Source of the DNA: Podarcis liolepis
Taxonomy: Eukaryota
Reading direction: 5' to 3' (one strand)
DNA: 64,000 nt
Assembly (NCBI GenBank): GCA_965112155.1
Contig: OZ218100.1
The translations under genes and the position numbers were made by a program. The notes below the pieces were generated by a model that was not told the DNA's origin, did no database searches, and saw only the letters and a program-made list of their open reading frames with translations. This document shows positions 24,503 to 33,443 of this stretch, one piece after another (positions within the stretch are counted from its first letter, which is position 1; each line of letters begins with the position of its first letter).

Positions 24503-24716
24503 AAGGCGTGTTCTCCTTCAAATGAGAGCACGTGTTGCGGTTGGGCGAATACAAGCCACCCTGCTGTTATCAGGCAGTTGAATGAGGTAGAACCCTTTAA
24601 AGGGTTAATTGAGTTACTGGGGAGTTTAGCATGTTGCCAATTAGGAAGGAAGGGCAGAGGCTATAAATACAGGTTACCCACGTTGGGGCGTCCTCTTGGC
24701 CTCTGCATCGGATCAC
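24503..24716 (+). repeat. Split direct repeat A1 (214 bp)
   Basis: Identical by eye to A2 at 30900-31113. Confidence 0.95.
24637..24700 (+). promoter_or_regulatory. Putative Pol II promoter in repeat A
   Basis: CCAAT 24637-24641, TATAAAT 24662-24668, pyrimidine-rich initiator-like CCTCTT about 30 nt downstream; duplicated in A2. Confidence 0.6.
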
Positions 24717-25608
24717 GGAGCAGATCGTCTGGAGCCTGGTTGTATTTGAGTATTTAAGAACTTTGCTTATCTGCTGCTGATTTCTTTGAGCCTTATAACC
24801 TTCTGTTCCTCCCCCTTTATTTATTTAATTTCCTTTCCACATTTTTTCCTCCCTCCTTCCGTTAATTCTCTCTTTTGGTTTAGTTTAATCTGAATTAGCA
24901 GCGGCTTTATTGGGAGCGGGAGTCCCCACCCCCCCCAGCCCGGGGGAGGCTTTCCTCCCGGCGTCGGGGAAGCGCCCGCGCTTTCGCCAGGCCGCGGCCC
25001 GCCCTCCCCCCGTCCTTAGCTCCGTAGCGCGGAGCGTCTCCGAGAGCCGCCCCCCCGCCCTCCTCGCGTCTCCCACACTTGGGCCTACCTGGAGCCGCGT
25101 CGGGCGGCTGGATTCGGGCCCACTTTTGCCGGAGGTCGTTGCCGCGTCGGCGGCGTCCCGTCCTCCGGTGCTGTGTCCTTGCGGCCGCGCGGCGGCGGCG
25201 AGGAGCGCGCTCCACCGGGGATTTCTTCAGCGGGCCCCTTTTGACCTAACAGGCCCACCCGCCTCGCGTTAGCGCGCGGGGGGGGGGCACATACAGGCCC
25301 GGTTCGCTAGCGCTGCGGCCTGGGCGCGCTCGCGGCCTGGTCGCAATTGCTAAGTCATTCCGGTTAGCTCCGCCATTTTAGGTAGCGTCTTGCCGACGGA
25401 GGCTCCCCCTGGTGGCTAGGATTGGTACTGCGCCTCAGTTGCTTTTCTTGAAGAGCTAGGCCGCACCCCCTACCCCTCGCCCCCTGCTGGTTGCTAGTAT
25501 ATTACGCTTTACTAATTGCTGTTTGGTAGTGATTGCTTTGCGTTTGGGCCTGCTGAGGCCTCCTGAGTTGGCAACAGTGCTCAGGACTGTTGTCCTGGCT
25601 TGGTTTGT

Positions 25609-25642
<34 letters not shown>
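25609..25642. repeat. (GATA)n microsatellite in the retrotransposon 5' leader
   Basis: Direct reading. Confidence 0.95.
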
Positions 25643-25820
25643 CTTCGATAGTCCGATACACCTGGCTGTTGCCTGGCCAAGAGACAGTCTTTATTCCGAG
25701 CTGCGGCCTAGATTTCACTCGAAGGCCCAACAGTGCTTTTTTGGTTGGAGGTTGCTAGCTTCATTTTGCCGTAGCGTTTGAATATTGACTTGGTTTTGAT
25801 TTTATTTCCTGCTAGCAGGT

Positions 25821-27347
25821 ATGGCTCCAAAGAAAGCTGCTGCGCGCTCCAGCTCTGTCATCGCGTCAAAGCGGCCTATTAGAGGTCCATCCCAAGCGCT
25901 TCGCTCTCCCCCCACCAACCAACCGGTGGGGCGAGTGCAATCGTTGGTAGCAGGCATGGCAGGTGACCCGGTGGCTCTATCTCGCTTCGCAGCTGACTTG
26001 GACCTTTTTCTGCAACATCGTTCTTCTCAACCATCAACATCTGGAGGGCTGCCCTCTTCAGCAGTGGTGCCGCCTCCGGCTTCATCGTCATCTAGCGAGG
26101 ATGAGGGAGAAGGACCGTCATCACAGGGTTTAATTAGGAACCCACAGTCATCCCAGTCTCCTGGCTTACCTGTAATACAGAACCGGCCTCGGAGGGCAGG
26201 CCGCCTGTCCAGGCGGGCCTCTGAAAAGAGTGCACCATTGGCTGTGTCCACTCGCCGGCGCACGCCTGCTCGGTCTCCACCGGTTGTGGCATCCGGGTCT
26301 GGTATCTCACATGTTGTCTCTATGCAGTCTGTTTCAGTTCCGTCCCAGCAGCATCCTGAATCGGAGTCCTCTGTCGAAGACAGTCTCCCGGTCCCCGCCA
26401 GGAAGTCCATGGGAGGGAAGCGTCGCCACAAGAGGGTGTCTCGAAAACGTGCAAAGCGCAGGAAGGACGACTCCTCTTCCTCTACTTCGGGTACGTCTTC
26501 CTCTAGCTCTGATGATGAGGGTACTCACTTGGAACTTTATTGGGGTTTTGGTGAATCGGCTTCAGGGCTTCCTAGGTGGGCTTGGGAACGCAGGTCCAAC
26601 GCTCATCGGGCAAAGTATGGGGCTGTTCAGGAATGCAGGGATGGTGTGTTGGTTCCCGACGTTAGAGTCTCAACCAATTCGGCCAGGGATATCATCCCAG
26701 GCTCACACTTGTCATCGAAATTGCGGTCCAGGATCTTAAATGGACGCTATGTAGACATTTTCAAATTGGCCCCGCCCTCTGAAGAGCAAGAAAAAGGAAG
26801 TGCTTCCACCAAAAAACGCTCAGGGGTTTCTGCGGCGGGTAGGTCCTTCGAACAGTGGCTCGACTGTTTTCAGGTCTTCGCCGGTATAGTCATGGCAGCT
26901 TATCCGCGTAGGTCCCTTCATTTGTTAGTTTATCTATCGATTGTGCGCTCTGCCTTTACCAAGGCGGGTGATAAAGCTGCAATTAAATACGATGAGAACT
27001 TTAGGCGCCGCGCGGCCAAGATCCCTTCTGCACGCTGGGATCGGAAAGATCTCGATGTGTGGACTACTTACGTCGCTCCGCTCATTGACAAAAAGGTACC
27101 GGAGCAGCAGAAACTGGGTGTCTCTACTTTTAGACCTGGCCGTCGATTGCCGTGTTGGGATTTTAACAGGACCTCATGTCAGCGTTCAACTTGTAGATTT
27201 GCGCACACCTGTGAGAAATGCAATGGATTGCATCCGGCTTCCTCTTGTTTTGGTGGACGGCGGCCCTTTCGTGGAGGAAAGGGGGGCTCCCAACAACCCC
27301 CCAAGTCAGTCCCCCCCACACCCTCAACCTCAGGAACAGCAAAATAA
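25821..27347 (+). CDS. gag: Ngaro Gag-like ORF1 (508 aa)
   Basis: S/P/R-rich N-terminus, basic cluster KRRHKRVSRKRAKRRK, core motifs RILNGRYVDIFKL / W..CF..F / KYDENFRR, C-terminal Cys/His finger CWDFNRTSCQRSTCRFAHTCEKCNGLHPASSC. Confidence 0.85.
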   Translation: MAPKKAAARSSSVIASKRPIRGPSQALRSPPTNQPVGRVQSLVAGMAGDPVALSRFAADLDLFLQHRSSQPSTSGGLPSSAVVPPPASSSSSEDEGEGPSSQGLIRNPQSSQSPGLPVIQNRPRRAGRLSRRASEKSAPLAVSTRRRTPARSPPVVASGSGISHVVSMQSVSVPSQQHPESESSVEDSLPVPARKSMGGKRRHKRVSRKRAKRRKDDSSSSTSGTSSSSSDDEGTHLELYWGFGESASGLPRWAWERRSNAHRAKYGAVQECRDGVLVPDVRVSTNSARDIIPGSHLSSKLRSRILNGRYVDIFKLAPPSEEQEKGSASTKKRSGVSAAGRSFEQWLDCFQVFAGIVMAAYPRRSLHLLVYLSIVRSAFTKAGDKAAIKYDENFRRRAAKIPSARWDRKDLDVWTTYVAPLIDKKVPEQQKLGVSTFRPGRRLPCWDFNRTSCQRSTCRFAHTCEKCNGLHPASSCFGGRRPFRGGKGGSQQPPKSVPPTPSTSGTAK

Positions 27348-28953
27348 GGTGCTGACTTCCTTGGCTCAGACTCCTATACGTCTGCCGGCCCTTAAAAAGT
27401 GGCTCAGGTTTTACCCAGATAGGGAGGCCGCTCGTTACCTGAGCGACGGTTTTTCTGTTGGTTTTCGGATTCCGGTAGCCAAGCCTCCCGTGGCTCGGAA
27501 TTCGTCTAATCAGAAATCAGTTCGTGAGTTGCCAGAAATTGCTCGAAGAAAGATCACAAAAGAGGTGGCTATGCACCGGATGGCTGGCCCCTTTTGTGCC
27601 CCTCCATTTCCTAAATTGCATGTTTCCCCACTGGGCATCGTGCCAAAGAAAGCCCCTGGTGAATTCCGTTTGATTCATAATTTATCACACCCTAGGGGTA
27701 CTTCAGTTAACGACGTGATTCCTCCAGAGCTTTGCTCAGTTAGGTATGCCTCTCTTGATCACGCGATCAAGATGATCCGGAAATTTGGACCAGCTGCGTT
27801 ATTGGCAAAATGCGACATAGAGTCGGCATTCCGTTTGCTGCCGATTCATCCGGAGGATTTCTGGCTGCTCGGTTTCCAGTTTGAGGGAAAATACTATTTT
27901 GACAAAGCCATGCCCATGGGCTGTTCTATAGCGTGCGCTGCTTTTGAATCTTTCAGTACCTTTTTGGAGTGGGCCCTCAAGCTGAAAACCGGGTTGGATG
28001 GGGTTACTCATTATTTGGATGATTTTTTATTGGCTTCTGATTGTAATACTGACAATTGCTCGGTTCTGTTGCAAGCTTTAGCGGCCCTTACTGAGGAATT
28101 GGGGGTCCCGTTAGCGGCAGAAAAGACTGAGGGTCCCTCGACTCAGCTCACGTATTTGGGTATCCTTTTGGATACGGTGTCTCAAACTTCTAGCTTGCCA
28201 AAGGTGAAGCTGGTGGCTTTGAAAAAGGTTATAGAGGAATTGCTTCCCTTAAAGAAAGTGTCCCTACTGCAGATCCAATCGCTGTTAGGTCACCTGAATT
28301 TTGCCTGTAGGGTGGTGGCCCCGGGCCGCCCCTTTTGCTCTCGTTTGGCTCGCCTCACGGTGGGCTTGAAGGCCCCGCATCATCGTGTTCGTCTTTCCAG
28401 GGAGGTGAGGGCTGATCTCAGCATATGGCTTGAGTTTTTGGAGGAATTCAATGGGGTATCGTTATGGCAAGACACTCTGAACTTGCAGAACGATTTTCAG
28501 GTGCACTCAGATGCTGCAGGGTCCCAGGGTTTCGGCCTATATTGGATGGGTAGGTGGTGTGCCAAGCGCTGGCCTCTTGACTGGCAGGGAACAGCCATTA
28601 CGCGGGACCTAACTTTTCTTGAGTTCTTTCCCATTGCAGTGGCAGTGCACTTGTGGGTCGAAGAGTTCAGGGACCGACGTGTCTGCTTCTGGACTGATAA
28701 CCAGGCGGTGGTGGACGTGCTGGCCAAGCTGTCGTCCCGCTCTCCTAGGGTGTCGGCCCTTTTGCGGGCTTTTGTTTTACATTGTTTACGTTATAATATA
28801 GTCTTTTCCGCTCGTTTTGTTCCGGGGGTGTCTAACGAAATTGCCGATGCTCTGTCCCGTTTTCAGATGGAGCGGTTCAGACTTCTGGTTCCAGAGGCTC
28901 GGAAACGTCCGGAATGTTTCCCGGAACATCTCTGGAGCCTTGGCAGGAGCTAG
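26941..28953 (+). CDS. pol: Reverse transcriptase-RNase H (ORF2); true start uncertain
   Basis: RT motifs FRLIHNLS, KCDIESAFR, MPMG, YLDD; RNase H SDAAG, LEFFPI, TDN, NEIADALSR; overlaps gag in the +1 frame. Confidence 0.95.
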   Translation: MCALPLPRRVIKLQLNTMRTLGAARPRSLLHAGIGKISMCGLLTSLRSLTKRYRSSRNWVSLLLDLAVDCRVGILTGPHVSVQLVDLRTPVRNAMDCIRLPLVLVDGGPFVEERGAPNNPPSQSPPHPQPQEQQNKVLTSLAQTPIRLPALKKWLRFYPDREAARYLSDGFSVGFRIPVAKPPVARNSSNQKSVRELPEIARRKITKEVAMHRMAGPFCAPPFPKLHVSPLGIVPKKAPGEFRLIHNLSHPRGTSVNDVIPPELCSVRYASLDHAIKMIRKFGPAALLAKCDIESAFRLLPIHPEDFWLLGFQFEGKYYFDKAMPMGCSIACAAFESFSTFLEWALKLKTGLDGVTHYLDDFLLASDCNTDNCSVLLQALAALTEELGVPLAAEKTEGPSTQLTYLGILLDTVSQTSSLPKVKLVALKKVIEELLPLKKVSLLQIQSLLGHLNFACRVVAPGRPFCSRLARLTVGLKAPHHRVRLSREVRADLSIWLEFLEEFNGVSLWQDTLNLQNDFQVHSDAAGSQGFGLYWMGRWCAKRWPLDWQGTAITRDLTFLEFFPIAVAVHLWVEEFRDRRVCFWTDNQAVVDVLAKLSSRSPRVSALLRAFVLHCLRYNIVFSARFVPGVSNEIADALSRFQMERFRLLVPEARKRPECFPEHLWSLGRS

Positions 28954-29837
28954 TTTTTCAGGGAGTAATGGCTTCTATTTCTCCTTCTACTCTCAGGTCA
29001 TACACTAAAGCATGGGCTGATTTTTTGTCCTTTACATATCAGTCAGCCGAGGAGCAAAGGGGGGCTTCCCCCTCTACTTCTCAGGTGCTAAGATATTTGG
29101 CGCACCTGTTTCAGTTAGGACGTGCAGCTAAGACGCTAAGAATTCAGGCAGCTGCCATTGCCTTTTTCTGCAAAGCTTATTTCGACAAAGATCCTTGCGC
29201 TAAATTTGCCGTGCGTAAGGCCCTTGAGGGATGGGGTAGGCTTTGTCCTTCCCAGCCAGCTACTAGGCACCCTATCTCATATGATTTGCTGTGCAAAATG
29301 CGCAAGGAGTTGAGGAAGGTTTGCTGGTCCAGGTATGAGGCTCGTCTTTTTTCTGCGGCCTTTTCTATTGCCTTCTTCGGAGCACTAAGGGTTGGTGAGC
29401 TCGTATGGGAGGAGCACAATAATGGCAGTTCTAGGGGATTATTGCTTCAGGATGCACAGCTATCTCCAGATGAGCTGAGGCTCCTCATTAGGAACTCAAA
29501 AACGGATCAGGACGGAAGGGGAGCCCTCATTCGTCTCCCGGCCACAAGGGAGGTGGGTCCGTGTCCGGTCAAAGATGTCAGGAGGTACTTGTCCATCCGG
29601 GCCCCGGGGGAAGGTCCACTGCTGCAGCACGAAGATGGGTCGCCTCTATCTAGGCGACAGTTTGCAAGGGTGATGCGGAAGGCCATTGCGGCTTGTGGTG
29701 ATTCTGCTAGTGATTTTGCCCCACATTCTTTCAGGATTGGGGCTGCCACGACGGCAGCGCATTGGGGCCTGTCTGCAGGCAGAATAAAGAATTTGGGTCG
29801 TTGGAAGTCGAATGCGTTTAGAGGCTATGTTCGCTAA
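28914..29837 (+). CDS. Tyrosine recombinase (phage-integrase family), 307 aa
   Basis: Catalytic set ALRVGEL (R), SKTDQ (K), HSFR (HxxR), GRW, terminal Y in FRGYVR. Confidence 0.95.
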   Translation: MFPGTSLEPWQELVFQGVMASISPSTLRSYTKAWADFLSFTYQSAEEQRGASPSTSQVLRYLAHLFQLGRAAKTLRIQAAAIAFFCKAYFDKDPCAKFAVRKALEGWGRLCPSQPATRHPISYDLLCKMRKELRKVCWSRYEARLFSAAFSIAFFGALRVGELVWEEHNNGSSRGLLLQDAQLSPDELRLLIRNSKTDQDGRGALIRLPATREVGPCPVKDVRRYLSIRAPGEGPLLQHEDGSPLSRRQFARVMRKAIAACGDSASDFAPHSFRIGAATTAAHWGLSAGRIKNLGRWKSNAFRGYVR

Positions 29838-29893
29838 CATGATGTTTTATATTTTGTTTCTCTATACCAGGTTTAGCAGCCGTACGCATATGG

Positions 29894-30445
29894 ATGGTGG
29901 GGCACAGTATCGTACATTGGGCCGGTGTTGGAGCCAGGCAGCTCAGATTGGGACCAGGTCTCGGCCTTCCTCCTCACGTGCGCGTATCTTGGCTGGCCAG
30001 AAGGGGAATGTCCTGGACTGAGTTTCTGCCACTGATTCGTAGGCAGCTAGCCGAGGAAGGGCCGCCCTCGGCCATTGTTGTGCAGTTGGGTGAGAACGAC
30101 CTGGTTTCTATGGACTGTGCTTCTTTACGTGCTGCTATCTTGGGTGATCTTGAAGTGCTGCGAGCAATGGTGCCGGCAACAAAAATTTTCTGGTCAAAAT
30201 TTTTGCAAAGGCGCAGTTGGAGAGGCAGTCGGTGCCCGACTGCCACCGAAAGGGCTAGGAAGCGGATCAATTCGGCAGTCTCAAAAAAGGTTTTTGAGTT
30301 GGGAGGTGACGTGATTTCTCATCCTGAGATTCTGGCTAGGGATGAATCTCTTTTCAGGGATGATGGGGTGCATCTTTCGGCTTTAGGGAATAAAGCGTGG
30401 CTGGGTGCTGTGGTGGCTAAGCTAAGGTCTTGGCTGGGTTCGTGA
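29894..30445 (+). CDS. SGNH/GDSL-family hydrolase (esterase) ORF; probably a spliced exon starting at 29871
   Basis: Blocks VGHS (Ser), RRG, QLGEND (Asn), DGVH (His). Confidence 0.88.
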   Translation: MVGHSIVHWAGVGARQLRLGPGLGLPPHVRVSWLARRGMSWTEFLPLIRRQLAEEGPPSAIVVQLGENDLVSMDCASLRAAILGDLEVLRAMVPATKIFWSKFLQRRSWRGSRCPTATERARKRINSAVSKKVFELGGDVISHPEILARDESLFRDDGVHLSALGNKAWLGAVVAKLRSWLGS

Positions 30446-30475
30446 GTGGTTTGGCGGCGAGCTTAAGGCTCCATA

Positions 30476-30901
30476 TGGCGGTTAGGCATTGGTTTAAAAT
30501 TGGTTGGGAGGGGTAAGTGCCTACCCCTCCAATGGTGGTGCGAAAAGGGAATTCCGTTAAAGGAATCCAGGGGCTTGCCATTCTTTCGTCCTTGTCCCCG
30601 GAGTCGGACCTGGGCCGTGCAAGCCCCACAGGAACATGAGGGTGAGAGGTGTGGGACTGTTACCCAGCCTCACCTTCTCACCCAATACTTGTTTCCCAAG
30701 CTGGCTTCCGCTGGAATCCGGAAGACCAGCCCTGTCCCTGGGCAAGGACAGATAGTCTTAACCAATGCCTAAGCAACCACTCACGTATTTGTATTTTAAT
30801 AAAGTTGTGGCCAAAAATCATGCCAAAAACCTTAAACAAAAATTAATGTGTGAAGTGTGAATTATTTTGGTGAGGGTGGCTTTGTGGGACTCAACACGCA
30901 A
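30476..30901 (+). repeat. Split direct repeat B1 (426 bp)
   Basis: Matches B2 (offset 811) with two substitutions seen: 30541 C / 31352 T and 30554 C / 31365 A. Confidence 0.95.
30798..30803 (+). terminator. Poly(A) signal in B1
   Basis: AATAAA followed by GT/T-rich downstream sequence. Confidence 0.6.
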
Positions 30902-31113
30902 GGCGTGTTCTCCTTCAAATGAGAGCACGTGTTGCGGTTGGGCGAATACAAGCCACCCTGCTGTTATCAGGCAGTTGAATGAGGTAGAACCCTTTAAAGG
31001 GTTAATTGAGTTACTGGGGAGTTTAGCATGTTGCCAATTAGGAAGGAAGGGCAGAGGCTATAAATACAGGTTACCCACGTTGGGGCGTCCTCTTGGCCTC
31101 TGCATCGGATCAC
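30900..31113 (+). repeat. Split direct repeat A2
   Basis: Identical to A1; contains CCAAT 31034-31038 and TATAAAT 31059-31065. Confidence 0.95.
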
Positions 31114-31286
31114 CCGCCCACCCTCCCTTTTAAAGGGGGGGTTTCTTGGTTATTGACCTTGCTATGCCTGTCATGGGGTCGTTCGCCTTGGTGCGGGGGC
31201 CTGGTAGGAATTTACCATTTGGCTGATTGGCTGGTGCCATTTGGGTTTCGCCTACTACGTAGCAAATAAGTCACAACTTGTAAGGT
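31114..31286 (+). ncRNA. Unique A2-B2 spacer; candidate structured RNA element
   Basis: Nested complementary segments, e.g. TTGCTATG/CGTAGCAA and TGGTAGG/CCTACTA; no meaningful ORF. Confidence 0.45.
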
Positions 31287-31712
31287 TGGCGGTTAGGCAT
31301 TGGTTTAAAATTGGTTGGGAGGGGTAAGTGCCTACCCCTCCAATGGTGGTGTGAAAAGGGAATTACGTTAAAGGAATCCAGGGGCTTGCCATTCTTTCGT
31401 CCTTGTCCCCGGAGTCGGACCTGGGCCGTGCAAGCCCCACAGGAACATGAGGGTGAGAGGTGTGGGACTGTTACCCAGCCTCACCTTCTCACCCAATACT
31501 TGTTTCCCAAGCTGGCTTCCGCTGGAATCCGGAAGACCAGCCCTGTCCCTGGGCAAGGACAGATAGTCTTAACCAATGCCTAAGCAACCACTCACGTATT
31601 TGTATTTTAATAAAGTTGTGGCCAAAAATCATGCCAAAAACCTTAAACAAAAATTAATGTGTGAAGTGTGAATTATTTTGGTGAGGGTGGCTTTGTGGGA
31701 CTCAACACGCAA
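31287..31712 (+). repeat. Split direct repeat B2 (element 3' end)
   Basis: Copy of B1; ends ...CAACACGCAA; AATAAA at 31609-31614. Confidence 0.95.
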
Positions 31713-33291
31713 CCACACTTCCATAAGCTGTGGCATTACCAGGAGTGCCTCAACAGTTGAGGCAGGGTTGTGCAGGGCAGTAAGGAGAAAGGTGTTTCTT
31801 CAGGTATCCTGATCTCAAGTTGTTGGCACACCATACCAATTATGCACCTCCAAAAAGAAGCAGGCTTCATCATTGTACATGATCTGCCCTAACCATCTTG
31901 CATTAGAGGTAGATGCTATCAGAACATTGTGGGACTGGCCATGCAAAAGAAGTTGCAGCCATGCCACTGCTCCAGAAAAGATACAAATAATCAAATCCAA
32001 ATAAACTTGAAGAAAGGTTTTGTAGCGAAACACCACACATAAAATTGAACTTTCTGTTACCCCATGCTTGGAAGTGATCAACAGGAAATGGTTTCCACTA
32101 CCATTATGCCATGTTTGTGAACAACTCATAGGCATATAGGATACTTCCAAAGACTACTTTTGGAAACAGAAAGCGAGTAGATTCTGGAAGTCAGTTCTTA
32201 TAGCAAACAGTTCAAGCCTAAACATGTCTACTCAGACTCAAGCGTCACTAAATTCAATAGGGCAATCCCAAGTCAGCATGCTTGTTAGGAGTAGCTAACA
32301 TGGTGCCTTCCATATGTTGTTGGAATCTAACTCTTGTCAGTCCCAGATAGCATGACCAAGGGCCCACTAACATTCAGTGGGCCATAGGTTCCTCATCGCT
32401 GTTTACAAGATGCTTATAAGGTAAATGCTCTAAATTTAGCAGGAAACAACCTTCAAATATTTGAATATAAGACACCTTCTAATATTTATTTTTCAGCATG
32501 ATTTAACAGCTGACTGGAAATGCAGACAGTTTTAGGATGAATTCTGCTTAAACATGCTGCTTACTGGAAATTACCGATCATAAATTGCTTGTGCTTTTAC
32601 AGCATATGGGACTAAATACCGTATAATTATGCTTGTCATTTGAATTGTTGCTATACTGTTATTCACACTTGAGCAATTATTGCTTTTTTTGAAAAACAAA
32701 AAAATAAAAGTATGAGAACCATTGTTCTCTTGCTCACACCTGTGAGCTACAACCCAAAATCAAATGTTTTAATCTCACTGCCTTCTTTTCTTCCCACGAA
32801 GGTTGTTCAGGTTTTGCCTATAATGCTACTGCAGTCTATTAAATAGCTCTCATTGTGCCTGACTCAGCTGGTTCCTAAAATTTTCAGTACTGCTCTTACT
32901 GAAGTGATTGAGAATCCTTCTTTGGGCTTTTAAATGAAGCTGGGTCAAGCTCAATTTTTAGACTGAGTTCATTTGGAACAGGCACTGAAAGAATCCATAC
33001 TGTGCCTGCCTACATGTTTTCAATTCATTCTAAAAGAAATCCTGTGTCACTTTTCTGAGGAGATTTGGTTCTAATTGTACTACAATTATTTATAAAGGAT
33101 GCTTTATTATCCTCAAGATAGCAACTAAAATTATTTCTACCTTTGAGTGTTTGGGATTAGGAGAAATTATCTCGGGTTCTTTTTATTGTTGCTGCTGTTA
33201 ATAATCTTCATGTAGATTTCAGGACACTTTCATATGTTACCATGAAGATATCTTACTTATTTTTACAATTTAGAATGGTCCAGAAGTAAAG

Positions 33292-33443
33292 ACCAAACCC
33301 TGGTCGGAGCCTTGTGCTCATGAATGGGCTTATAAATGGTCAAAGCATGGTCTGGCATTGTACTTGAACCAAACCCTGGTCGGAGCCTTGTGCTCATGAA
33401 TGGGCTTATAAATGGTCAAAGCATGGTCTGGCATTGTACTTGA
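33292..33443. repeat. Perfect 76-bp tandem duplication
   Basis: ACCAAACCCTGGTCGGAG...GTACTTGA occurs twice, followed by the microhomology ACAAACCC. Confidence 0.95.

What the first reader, a model, noticed from the sequence alone, without database searches (positions are those of the whole stretch)
31059..31640. Possible second transcription unit: an element-encoded ~550-nt non-coding RNA (A2 promoter, unique spacer, B2 poly(A))
Seen: repeat A carries CCAAT and TATAAAT boxes and repeat B carries AATAAA plus a GU-rich tract. The split-repeat layout therefore forms two parallel promoter-to-poly(A) cassettes: A1 to B1 containing the ORFs, and A2 to B2 containing only a 173-nt unique spacer and the structured B domain. 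Inference: besides mRNA and a read-through genomic RNA, the element may make a small, highly structured ncRNA (about 31089-31635). It could act as primer or template-switch partner, packaging RNA or regulator. This would be an RT + ncRNA system that I do not know to be described for these elements.
Basis: partly seen in the sequence, partly recalled or inferred. Interest (0 to 1): 0.8.

Follow-up and report, generated by a model that had tools for sequence, protein, structure and literature searches.

The report
Ngaro retrotransposon tail, not proven RNA gene
The stretch is the ordinary repeat-bearing tail of an intact lizard Ngaro "jumping gene"; it does carry a second copy of the element's promoter and poly(A) signals, but nothing available shows that a separate small RNA is made from them or that such an RNA would have a job.

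Summary
The sequence observation holds. The window holds one intact Ngaro-type tyrosine-recombinase retrotransposon (24503-31712, + strand). Its layout is A1 - ORFs - B1 A2 - 173-nt spacer - B2. A (214 nt, copies identical) holds the element's only TATAAA. B (426 nt, 2 mismatches) holds AATAAA and a GU-rich tract.

The interpretation could not be tested. No RNA run holds the stretch. The runs laid were contigs of unknown type from other species, so they show no RNA ends.

The second TATA and the internal AATAAA are most simply forced by the element's copying strategy. The genomic RNA lacks about 190 nt of A and about 80 nt of B, and the internal B1|A2 junction is the only template that can restore them.

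An RNA starting in A2 would lack that junction. Its spacer has no complementarity to the rest of the element and is not unusually structured. Only the B domain is, and the full-length RNA carries it too. Primer or template-switch roles are therefore unlikely.

Low-level A2-to-B2 transcription is plausible, by analogy with DIRS-1, where both repeats are promoters. The closest precedent is T. cruzi SIRE, which equals A2 + unique + B2 of VIPER. Other notes in this scan describe ~0.8-kb ORF-less units on other DNA of this genome; A-spacer-B here is 813 nt.

The parts
24503..24716 (+). Repeat A1 (5' terminal repeat; CCAAT 24637, TATAAATA 24662)
   Evidence: 100% identical to 30900-31113; motif positions
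24717..30475 (+). Internal region: 1.1-kb leader; gag-like ORF 25821-27347; RT ORF 26941-28953; tyrosine recombinase ORF 28914-29837; SGNH/GDSL hydrolase ORF 29894-30445
   Evidence: ORF list. Pfam: RVT_1 E 2.7e-13, Phage_integrase E 2.6e-5, Phage_int_SAM_4 E 4e-4, Lipase_GDSL_2 E 7.8e-6. R..HSFR..Y catalytic residues read
30476..30901 (+). Repeat B1 (internal copy; AATAAA at 30798)
   Evidence: 426 nt, 2 mismatches to B2; motif
30873..30958 (+). Long imperfect hairpin spanning the B1|A2 junction (the sequence of the circle junction)
   Evidence: dG -59.1 kcal/mol, z -6.0, 0 of 200 shuffles as stable. The 250-nt window 30753-31002 gives z -7.3, the most structured place in the element
30900..31113 (+). 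Repeat A2 (internal copy of the promoter-bearing repeat)
31034..31066 (+). CCAAT (31034-31038) and TATAAATA (31059-31066) of A2
   Evidence: TATAAA is found only in A1 and A2 within the element
31087..31092 (+). Predicted start site if the A2 TATA fires (28-33 nt after the first T). Only about 22-25 nt of A would be transcribed
   Evidence: Inference from TATA spacing; no RNA data
31114..31286 (+). Unique 173-nt spacer. It includes a 10-bp hairpin at 31120-31142 and a possible 12-bp helix between the A tail (31095-31106) and 31190-31201
   Evidence: Unique in the window. Fold z -1.9, 8 of 200 shuffles as stable. Its 3' two-thirds are present at roughly 90% identity in contigs of other species (pieces 31162-31288)
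31287..31712 (+). Repeat B2 (3' terminal repeat; structured domain about 31290-31600)
   Evidence: z -3.8 for 31378-31627 and -4.2 for the B1 equivalent
31609..31614 (+). AATAAA poly(A) signal of B2; CA dinucleotides at 31630-31631 and 31635-31636 are candidate cleavage sites
   Evidence: the cleavage site is inferred
31657..31700 (+). GU-rich tract downstream of the poly(A) signal, inside the last ~80 nt of B that would not be transcribed
   Evidence: read

Best explanation
31059-31640 is the A2 - spacer - B2 tail of an intact, young Ngaro-type (DIRS order) tyrosine-recombinase retrotransposon.

How it works:
- Repeat A is the element's Pol II promoter, with CCAAT and TATA about 50 nt from its 3' end.
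- Repeat B carries a structured RNA domain followed by the poly(A) signal.
- The replicative RNA starts about 24 nt before the end of A1 and ends about 80 nt before the end of B2. It therefore lacks about 190 nt of A and about 80 nt of B.
- These parts can only be restored from the internal, contiguous B1|A2 copy. That copy also carries the hairpin-forming junction at which the circular DNA recombines with the target.

The split-direct-repeat strategy therefore forces a second TATA (in A2) and an internal AATAAA (in B1) to exist. No second gene is needed to explain them.

The A2 promoter probably fires at some level, weakened by read-through from A1. That would give a ~545-nt non-coding polyadenylated RNA sharing its first ~24 nt and its last ~345 nt with the genomic RNA. 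I take that RNA to be a by-product, like 3'-LTR or solo-LTR transcripts, and not a selected component.

Shown: repeat anatomy, motif positions and uniqueness, folding, absence of coding capacity.
Inferred: start site, cleavage site, which sites are used, and all statements about RNA abundance.
For: - Exact split-repeat anatomy.
- RT, tyrosine recombinase with R/HxxR/Y, and an SGNH ORF in Ngaro order.
- TATAAA occurs only in A within 7.2 kb, and AATAAA lies near the 3' end of B.
- The strongest structure of the element is the B1|A2 junction hairpin (z -6.0 to -7.3). This fits the junction, not the spacer, as the critical internal cis element.
- The spacer is not unusually structured and has no complementarity to the rest of the element.
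- No Rfam family or tRNA-like gene lies in the element.
- Literature: Ngaro is A1-[ORFs]-B1A2B2 (PMC8547959, PMC9210276). The reverse-transcription model for Ngaro/PAT involves annealing between repeat portions and implies near-identical A1/A2 and B1/B2 at insertion (PMC6681497). DIRS-1 RNA lacks most of both terminal repeats and restores them from an internal region (PMC7192593).
Against: - No RNA data of any kind were available, so promoter and poly(A) use are inferred from motifs alone.
- Both DIRS-1 terminal repeats are strong promoters (PMC4482531), so A2 could be as active as A1.
- The spacer's 3' part is kept at roughly 90% identity in other species, about as well as B and the ORFs. It therefore probably has some cis or trans role that this explanation leaves unnamed.
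- Terminal modules are 10-50 times deeper than the ORFs in runs of related species. A pure by-product view does not predict this.
Confidence: 0.68

Rival explanations
1. One reading: A2 to B2 is a selected second transcription unit. Its ~0.55-kb structured ncRNA serves the element as primer, template-switch partner, packaging RNA or regulator.
For: - A complete promoter-to-poly(A) cassette is present.
- The predicted RNA is non-coding and folds better than shuffles (z -3.8).
- It would share both termini with the genomic RNA, so it could compete for or recruit RT/Gag.
- The spacer is conserved in related species.
- In DIRS-1 the second terminal repeat is an active promoter (PMC4482531).
Against: - No RNA evidence.
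- It lacks the B1|A2 junction, so it cannot supply the missing ends.
- No spacer complementarity of 14 nt or more to the element, so there is no obvious priming site.
- The structure signal comes from B, which the genomic RNA carries twice; the spacer gives z about 0 to -1.9.
- In contigs of relatives the core of A, including CCAAT and TATA, does not align, while the junction, spacer and B do (joints 30942 to 31102/31152). TATA-to-spacer continuity is therefore not shown to be conserved.
- Other Ngaro are drawn as B1A2B2, and VIPER has only ~30 bp between A2 and B2 (PMC8547959, PMC6681497), so a sizeable spacer is not universal.
Confidence: 0.07
2. SIRE-like reading: A - spacer - B (813 nt) matters as a separable unit that accumulates on its own in the genome. 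Three routes could produce it:
(a) in-situ A1 x A2 recombination, giving a solo unit;
(b) resolution by the recombinase of the two-junction circular DNA into an A-internal-B circle and an A-spacer-B minicircle, each able to integrate;
(c) transcription from A and copying in trans, with the junction borrowed from a co-packaged full-length RNA.
For: - T. cruzi SIRE corresponds to A2 + ~30 bp unique + B2 of VIPER (PMC6681497).
- Solo AB repeats of Ngaro occur in Cafeteria (PMC8547959).
- Terminal modules are 10-50 times deeper than the ORFs in four runs of two other species.
- Unchecked scan notes report three ORF-less ~0.8-kb units read as terminal units of a YR retroelement (s1-845479). They also report a copy with only one of each end module (s1-845487), which is the reciprocal product.
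Against: - No stand-alone copy exists in this 64-kb window.
- The type of the laid runs is unknown, and contig depth is a poor copy-number measure.
- The scan notes are leads that I could not check.
- Routes (b) and (c) are my inference, without precedent that I could cite.
Confidence: 0.17
3. The motifs are chance matches: transcription starts and ends elsewhere, for example at a TATA-less start in the leader, or by read-through from the host intron.
For: Motif-only evidence; the element sits inside a host intron according to a scan note (s1-846423).
Against: - TATAAATA with a CCAAT 25 nt upstream occurs only in A, and AATAAA plus a GU-rich tract lies near the end of B. About 0.03 and 0.04 chance matches are expected per repeat.
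- Both motifs lie where the split-repeat model needs them.
Confidence: 0.08

Closest known systems
Ngaro retrotransposons (DIRS order), e.g. zebrafish and Xenopus Ngaro with an SGNH hydrolase ORF
   Same: Gag-like, RT/RH, tyrosine recombinase and SGNH ORFs in that order. Split direct repeats A1-[ORFs]-B1A2-B2 with identical partners. No target-site duplication (PMC9210276, PMC8547959).
   Different: The host is a lizard. There is a 173-nt unique spacer between A2 and B2, and B is long (426 nt) and structured. The Xenopus DIRS-53_XT repeats are 236 and 152 bp (PMC9210276).
SIRE / VIPER of Trypanosoma cruzi
   Same: SIRE is the 5' repeat piece + a short unique region + the 3' repeat piece, i.e. 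the A2-unique-B2 module of a split-repeat tyrosine-recombinase retroelement, existing as a dispersed short unit (PMC6681497). The module here has the same architecture (A 214 + unique 173 + B 426).
   Different: No dispersed copy is shown here. Kinetoplastid transcription is polycistronic, so SIRE needs no own Pol II promoter. There is no sequence relation.
DIRS-1 of Dictyostelium: second terminal-repeat promoter and E1 transcript
   Same: [quoted passage not shown] The second one yields extra transcripts besides the genomic RNA (PMC4482531).
   Different: DIRS-1 repeats are inverted, so the second promoter gives antisense RNA that feeds RNAi. Here the repeats are direct, so any A2 transcript is sense, short and co-terminal with the genomic RNA.
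3'-LTR and solo-LTR promoters of LTR retrotransposons and retroviruses (established knowledge)
   Same: A duplicated promoter and poly(A) signal are an unavoidable consequence of regenerating termini by reverse transcription. The downstream promoter copy is usually weakened by read-through but can fire.
   Different: In an LTR element the 3' promoter reads out into host DNA. In the Ngaro layout it meets the element's own poly(A) site after ~0.55 kb, so it would give a discrete element-internal RNA.

Membership tests
Ngaro (DIRS-order tyrosine-recombinase retrotransposon) | Reverse transcriptase ORF | tested here: met
   RVT_1 E 2.7e-13, 50.5 bits against a cut-off of 29.6
Ngaro (DIRS-order tyrosine-recombinase retrotransposon) | Tyrosine recombinase downstream of RT, same strand, with catalytic R / HxxR / Y | tested here: met
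   Phage_integrase E 2.6e-5 and SAM-like domain E 4e-4, both just under the Pfam cut-offs. ALRVGE, HSFR and GYVR motifs read in the translation
Ngaro (DIRS-order tyrosine-recombinase retrotransposon) | Split direct repeats A1-[ORFs]-B1A2-B2 with A1=A2 and B1=B2 | tested here: met
   A 214 nt at 100%; B 426 nt at 99.5%; B1 abuts A2
Ngaro (DIRS-order tyrosine-recombinase retrotransposon) | No methyltransferase domain (separates Ngaro from DIRS1-like and PAT) | tested here: met
   No methyltransferase family among the Pfam hits of any ORF. The C-terminal 262 aa of the RT ORF gave no hit at all, so RNase H itself was not confirmed
Ngaro (DIRS-order tyrosine-recombinase retrotransposon) | Extra SGNH hydrolase ORF after the recombinase (vertebrate Ngaro) | tested here: met
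   Lipase_GDSL_2 E 7.8e-6 over the full profile, below the curated cut-off; described for amphibian Ngaro (PMC9210276)
Independent Pol II ncRNA gene (A2 to B2) | Core promoter and poly(A) motifs in the right order and spacing | tested here: met
   CCAAT 31034, TATAAATA 31059, AATAAA 31609, GU-rich tract about 31657-31700
Independent Pol II ncRNA gene (A2 to B2) | RNA 5' ends mapping in A2 and continuing into the spacer | not testable with these tools
Independent Pol II ncRNA gene (A2 to B2) | Discrete ~0.55-kb polyadenylated product | not testable with these tools
   Same as above
Independent Pol II ncRNA gene (A2 to B2) | Constraint on the unit beyond that of the surrounding element | tested here: inconclusive
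   Spacer pieces are roughly 88-92% identical in other species, similar to B and the ORFs, while the core of A does not align. No second copy in the window allows a covariation test
SIRE-like dispersed A-unique-B unit | Stand-alone copies without ORFs | tested here: inconclusive
   None in this window. There is an excess of terminal modules in other species' runs of unknown type. Scan note s1-845479 was not checked
Any catalogued RNA family (Rfam 15) or tRNA-derived unit | Covariance-model or tRNA match | tested here: not met
   The only match is a chance-level one at 24900-24955 on the minus strand (E 0.04, 20.7 bits against a gathering score of 50). No tRNA was found

The most novel reading that the evidence does not exclude
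The A2 - spacer - B2 module is a working mini-unit. It is transcribed from its own A promoter into a ~545-nt polyadenylated, B-domain-bearing RNA that shares both ends with the genomic RNA. This RNA is recognised by the element's Gag/RT and is either copied in trans or competes with the genomic RNA. If copied, the missing junction would be borrowed from a co-packaged full-length RNA, seeding the ~0.8-kb ORF-less units and the excess of terminal modules in related lizards. This would be a vertebrate counterpart of SIRE/VIPER, built into every autonomous copy.
Probability: 0.1. Interest if true: 0.7.

Novelty: new member of a known kind. Interest (0 to 1): 0.3.

Why it matters
How split-direct-repeat retrotransposons are transcribed and copied has never been worked out experimentally. 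If A2 were shown to drive a discrete RNA, every Ngaro, PAT and VIPER element would carry a built-in second transcript. That could explain SINE-like satellites such as SIRE.

As it stands, the stretch is the expected tail of a known element type. Its value is a clean, young, fully intact reference copy. The promoter, poly(A) site, junction hairpin and spacer can be placed to the base on it, and the simple RNA-end experiment can be designed from it.

Tried and rejected
1. RNA evidence. The look-up of sequencing runs (kind rna) found no run on record as RNA. Read laying on 25800-31799 with four runs gave only fragmentary contigs of guessed type from other species, with no ends, strands or usable expression level.
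I wanted transcript contigs and related eukaryotic loci from it.
3. Other copies for comparison or covariation. None in the window by blastn, nhmmer or tblastn. None in viral contigs with the RT ORF. None in metagenome contigs with a conserved 22-mer of B.
4. Rfam and tRNA scans of the whole element gave nothing. A tRNA-derived or catalogued RNA is rejected.
5. Primer idea. I searched for inverted matches between the spacer and the rest of the element and found none of 14 nt or more.
6. 'Highly structured spacer'. Rejected: z about 0 to -1.9.
7. Goodwin and Poulter 2004 (the Ngaro paper) is not held in the library, so the original replication model is cited only through later papers.
8. The comparison of TATA-in-A and AATAAA-in-B across other Ngaro families was not run. 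It needs eukaryotic loci that the open tools do not serve, and it would not separate the rival readings. I therefore did not spend a large protein search on it.
9. A tRNA-type primer-binding site in the spacer (TGGTGCGGGGGCC, 31190-31201) was considered but not tested, because no reliable tRNA sequences were at hand.

Full report
**What is there**

The window contains one copy of a 7,210-bp element at 24503-31712 on the + strand.

- A 214-nt repeat A occurs at 24503-24716 (A1) and 30900-31113 (A2), 100% identical.
- A 426-nt repeat B occurs at 30476-30901 (B1) and 31287-31712 (B2) with two mismatches.
- B1 abuts A2 directly. The two bases AA are shared at the boundary and stand at both outer ends of the element. 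There is no target-site duplication.
- Between A2 and B2 lie 173 nt (31114-31286) that occur nowhere else in the window.

The internal 5.76 kb holds four ORFs:

| ORF | Coordinates | Evidence |
|---|---|---|
| gag-like, 508 aa | 25821-27347 | no Pfam family |
| reverse transcriptase | 26941-28953 | RVT_1, E 2.7e-13 |
| tyrosine recombinase | 28914-29837 | Phage_integrase and SAM-like hits; ALRVGE, HSFR and GYVR motifs |
| SGNH/GDSL hydrolase | 29894-30445 | Lipase_GDSL_2, E 7.8e-6 |

No methyltransferase family was found. This is the defining layout of Ngaro elements, A1-[ORFs]-B1A2B2, with the hydrolase ORF known from vertebrate Ngaro (PMC8547959, PMC9210276). A scan note places it in a lizard intron; I did not test the host.

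**The observation**

All the sequence claims hold.

- CCAAT is at 31034 and TATAAATA at 31059-31066, both in A2. AATAAA is at 31609-31614, and a GU-rich tract lies at about 31657-31700 in B2.
- TATAAA occurs only in the two A copies in the whole element. AATAAA occurs four times: twice inside ORFs (29783, 30389) and once in each B.
- By base composition, about 0.03 TATAAA are expected per A and 0.04 AATAAA per B. Their placement near the 3' ends of the repeats is unlikely to be chance.
- A transcript from about 31089 to a CA at 31630-31636 would be about 545 nt. It has no ORF beyond 17 codons.

**Structure**

- The 546-nt RNA folds better than shuffles (z -3.8).
- A scan of the whole element in 250-nt windows shows that the signal lies in the B domain (z -4.2 in B1, -3.8 in B2). 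The strongest signal lies at the B1|A2 junction (z -7.3).
- The junction folds into a long hairpin at 30873-30958, with dG -59 kcal/mol and z -6.0.
- Windows centred on the spacer give z about 0. The A tail plus spacer gives z -1.9, and 8 of 200 shuffles fold as well.
- 'Highly structured' therefore applies to B, which every full-length RNA carries twice. It does not apply to what is unique to the proposed RNA.

**Was RNA evidence obtainable?**

No.

- No run on record as RNA holds the stretch.
- I laid four small runs of guessed type from two other species on 25800-31799 at 85% likeness. They are Logan contigs, so they give no starts, ends or strand.
- They do show three things. First, the spacer's 3' two-thirds (pieces 31162-31288) and B exist in relatives at roughly 88-95% identity, like the ORF pieces.
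- Second, the core of A, including CCAAT and TATA, is skipped or not alignable in some contigs (joints 30942 to 31102 and 30942 to 31152/31153), although the sides are short. The first ~43 nt of A, which lie in the 3' arm of the junction hairpin, are kept.
- Third, terminal modules are 10-50 times deeper than the ORFs. Because the run type is unknown, this may be copy number or expression.
Scans for related DNA elsewhere found nothing. The window has no second copy.

**How it most likely works**

For these elements the published model has the genomic RNA shorter than the DNA copy, with the missing ends restored from an internal region.

- This is shown for DIRS-1 RNA (PMC7192593).

Placing the motifs on this copy gives the following:

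- An RNA starting about 24 nt before the end of A1 and ending about 80 nt before the end of B2 lacks about 190 nt of A and about 80 nt of B.
- The only contiguous template for these two pieces is the B1|A2 junction inside the same RNA.
- The promoter therefore has to be present a second time (A2), and the poly(A) signal has to be present internally (B1).
- The 'two parallel cassettes' follow from the copying strategy and need no second function.

The layout is equivalent to a circle with two B+A units, opened at one B|A boundary. The circle has one long inter-unit region (the genes) and one short one (the spacer).

**What an A2 transcript could and could not do**

- It would begin downstream of the junction, so it cannot donate the missing ends. 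The template-switch-partner idea fails on anatomy.
- The spacer has no inverted match of 14 nt or more to any other part of the element. Nothing in the element matches a tRNA or an Rfam family. A primer role has no support.
- The RNA would share its first ~24 nt and last ~345 nt with the genomic RNA. A decoy, packaging-competitor or mini-genome role is therefore conceivable but untested.
- That A2 fires at all is plausible. Both terminal repeats of DIRS-1 are strong promoters and the second gives extra transcripts (PMC4482531). Downstream LTR promoters are known to be weakened, not abolished, by read-through (established knowledge of retroviral transcriptional interference).
- My estimates: about 0.4-0.5 that a discrete A2-to-B2 RNA is detectable where the element is expressed, and about 0.07 that it is a selected component.

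**A different way in which the module may matter**

- A + spacer + B is 813 nt.
- In T. cruzi the short dispersed repeat SIRE corresponds to A2 + ~30 bp unique + B2 of the split-repeat element VIPER (PMC6681497). Cafeteria Ngaro leave solo AB repeats (PMC8547959).
- Unchecked notes of this scan report, on other DNA of the same genome, three ORF-less ~0.8-kb units read as terminal units of such an element (s1-845479). They also report a copy with one of each end module (s1-845487).
- These are the two reciprocal products expected from A1 x A2 or B1 x B2 recombination. They are also expected if the recombinase resolves the two-junction circle into two circles.
- Together with the excess of terminal modules in relatives, this makes a SIRE-like reading the most interesting open alternative (about 0.17). 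I could not test it in this window.

**Verdict**

Its proposed functions are mostly disfavoured by the anatomy.
- The feature is the ordinary terminal module of a new, intact member of a known element type.

Noticed in passing
window 30873-30958: The B1|A2 junction folds into a long imperfect hairpin (dG -59 kcal/mol, z -6.0). The surrounding 250-nt window is the most structured place in the element (z -7.3). It is probably the recombination or circle-junction site. The first ~43 nt of A, in its 3' arm, are the part of A kept in relatives.
   Followed up: partly
window 28878-29127: A strongly structured window (z -4.6) lies at the overlap of the RT and recombinase ORFs. It may relate to how the recombinase is expressed: by frameshift, or by the splice acceptor proposed in another scan note.
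   Followed up: no
window 30400-31800 compared with 25800-30400: In contigs of four runs from two other species, the terminal modules are 10-50 times deeper than the ORF region. Variant joints suggest a 154-nt deletion form of B (30591 to 30746) and an SGNH-less form (29922 joined to the start of B).
   Followed up: partly
window 31095-31106 and 31190-31201: The ~24-nt transcribed tail of A can form a 12-bp helix (three G-U pairs) with the spacer. The same tail at the 5' end of the genomic RNA could pair with the spacer near the 3' end and bring the two ends together. This is not statistically remarkable (z -1.9).
   Followed up: partly
window 31120-31142: A 10-bp hairpin, CCCUCCCUUU / AAAGGGGGGG, lies just after A2. 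A loose-end consensus from another species shows a different sequence at the same place that can also form a short hairpin.
   Followed up: no
window 24717-25820: An unusually long (1.1-kb) leader lies between A1 and the gag-like ATG. It has a very GC-rich stretch (24900-25400) and no Pfam-recognisable ORF.
   Followed up: no
window 33292-33443: A perfect tandem duplication of a 76-nt unit lies in the host flank, 1.6 kb downstream of the element.
   Followed up: no
window 29783 and 30389: Two further AATAAA hexamers lie inside the recombinase and hydrolase ORFs, upstream of B1. They are possible premature poly(A) sites.
   Followed up: no
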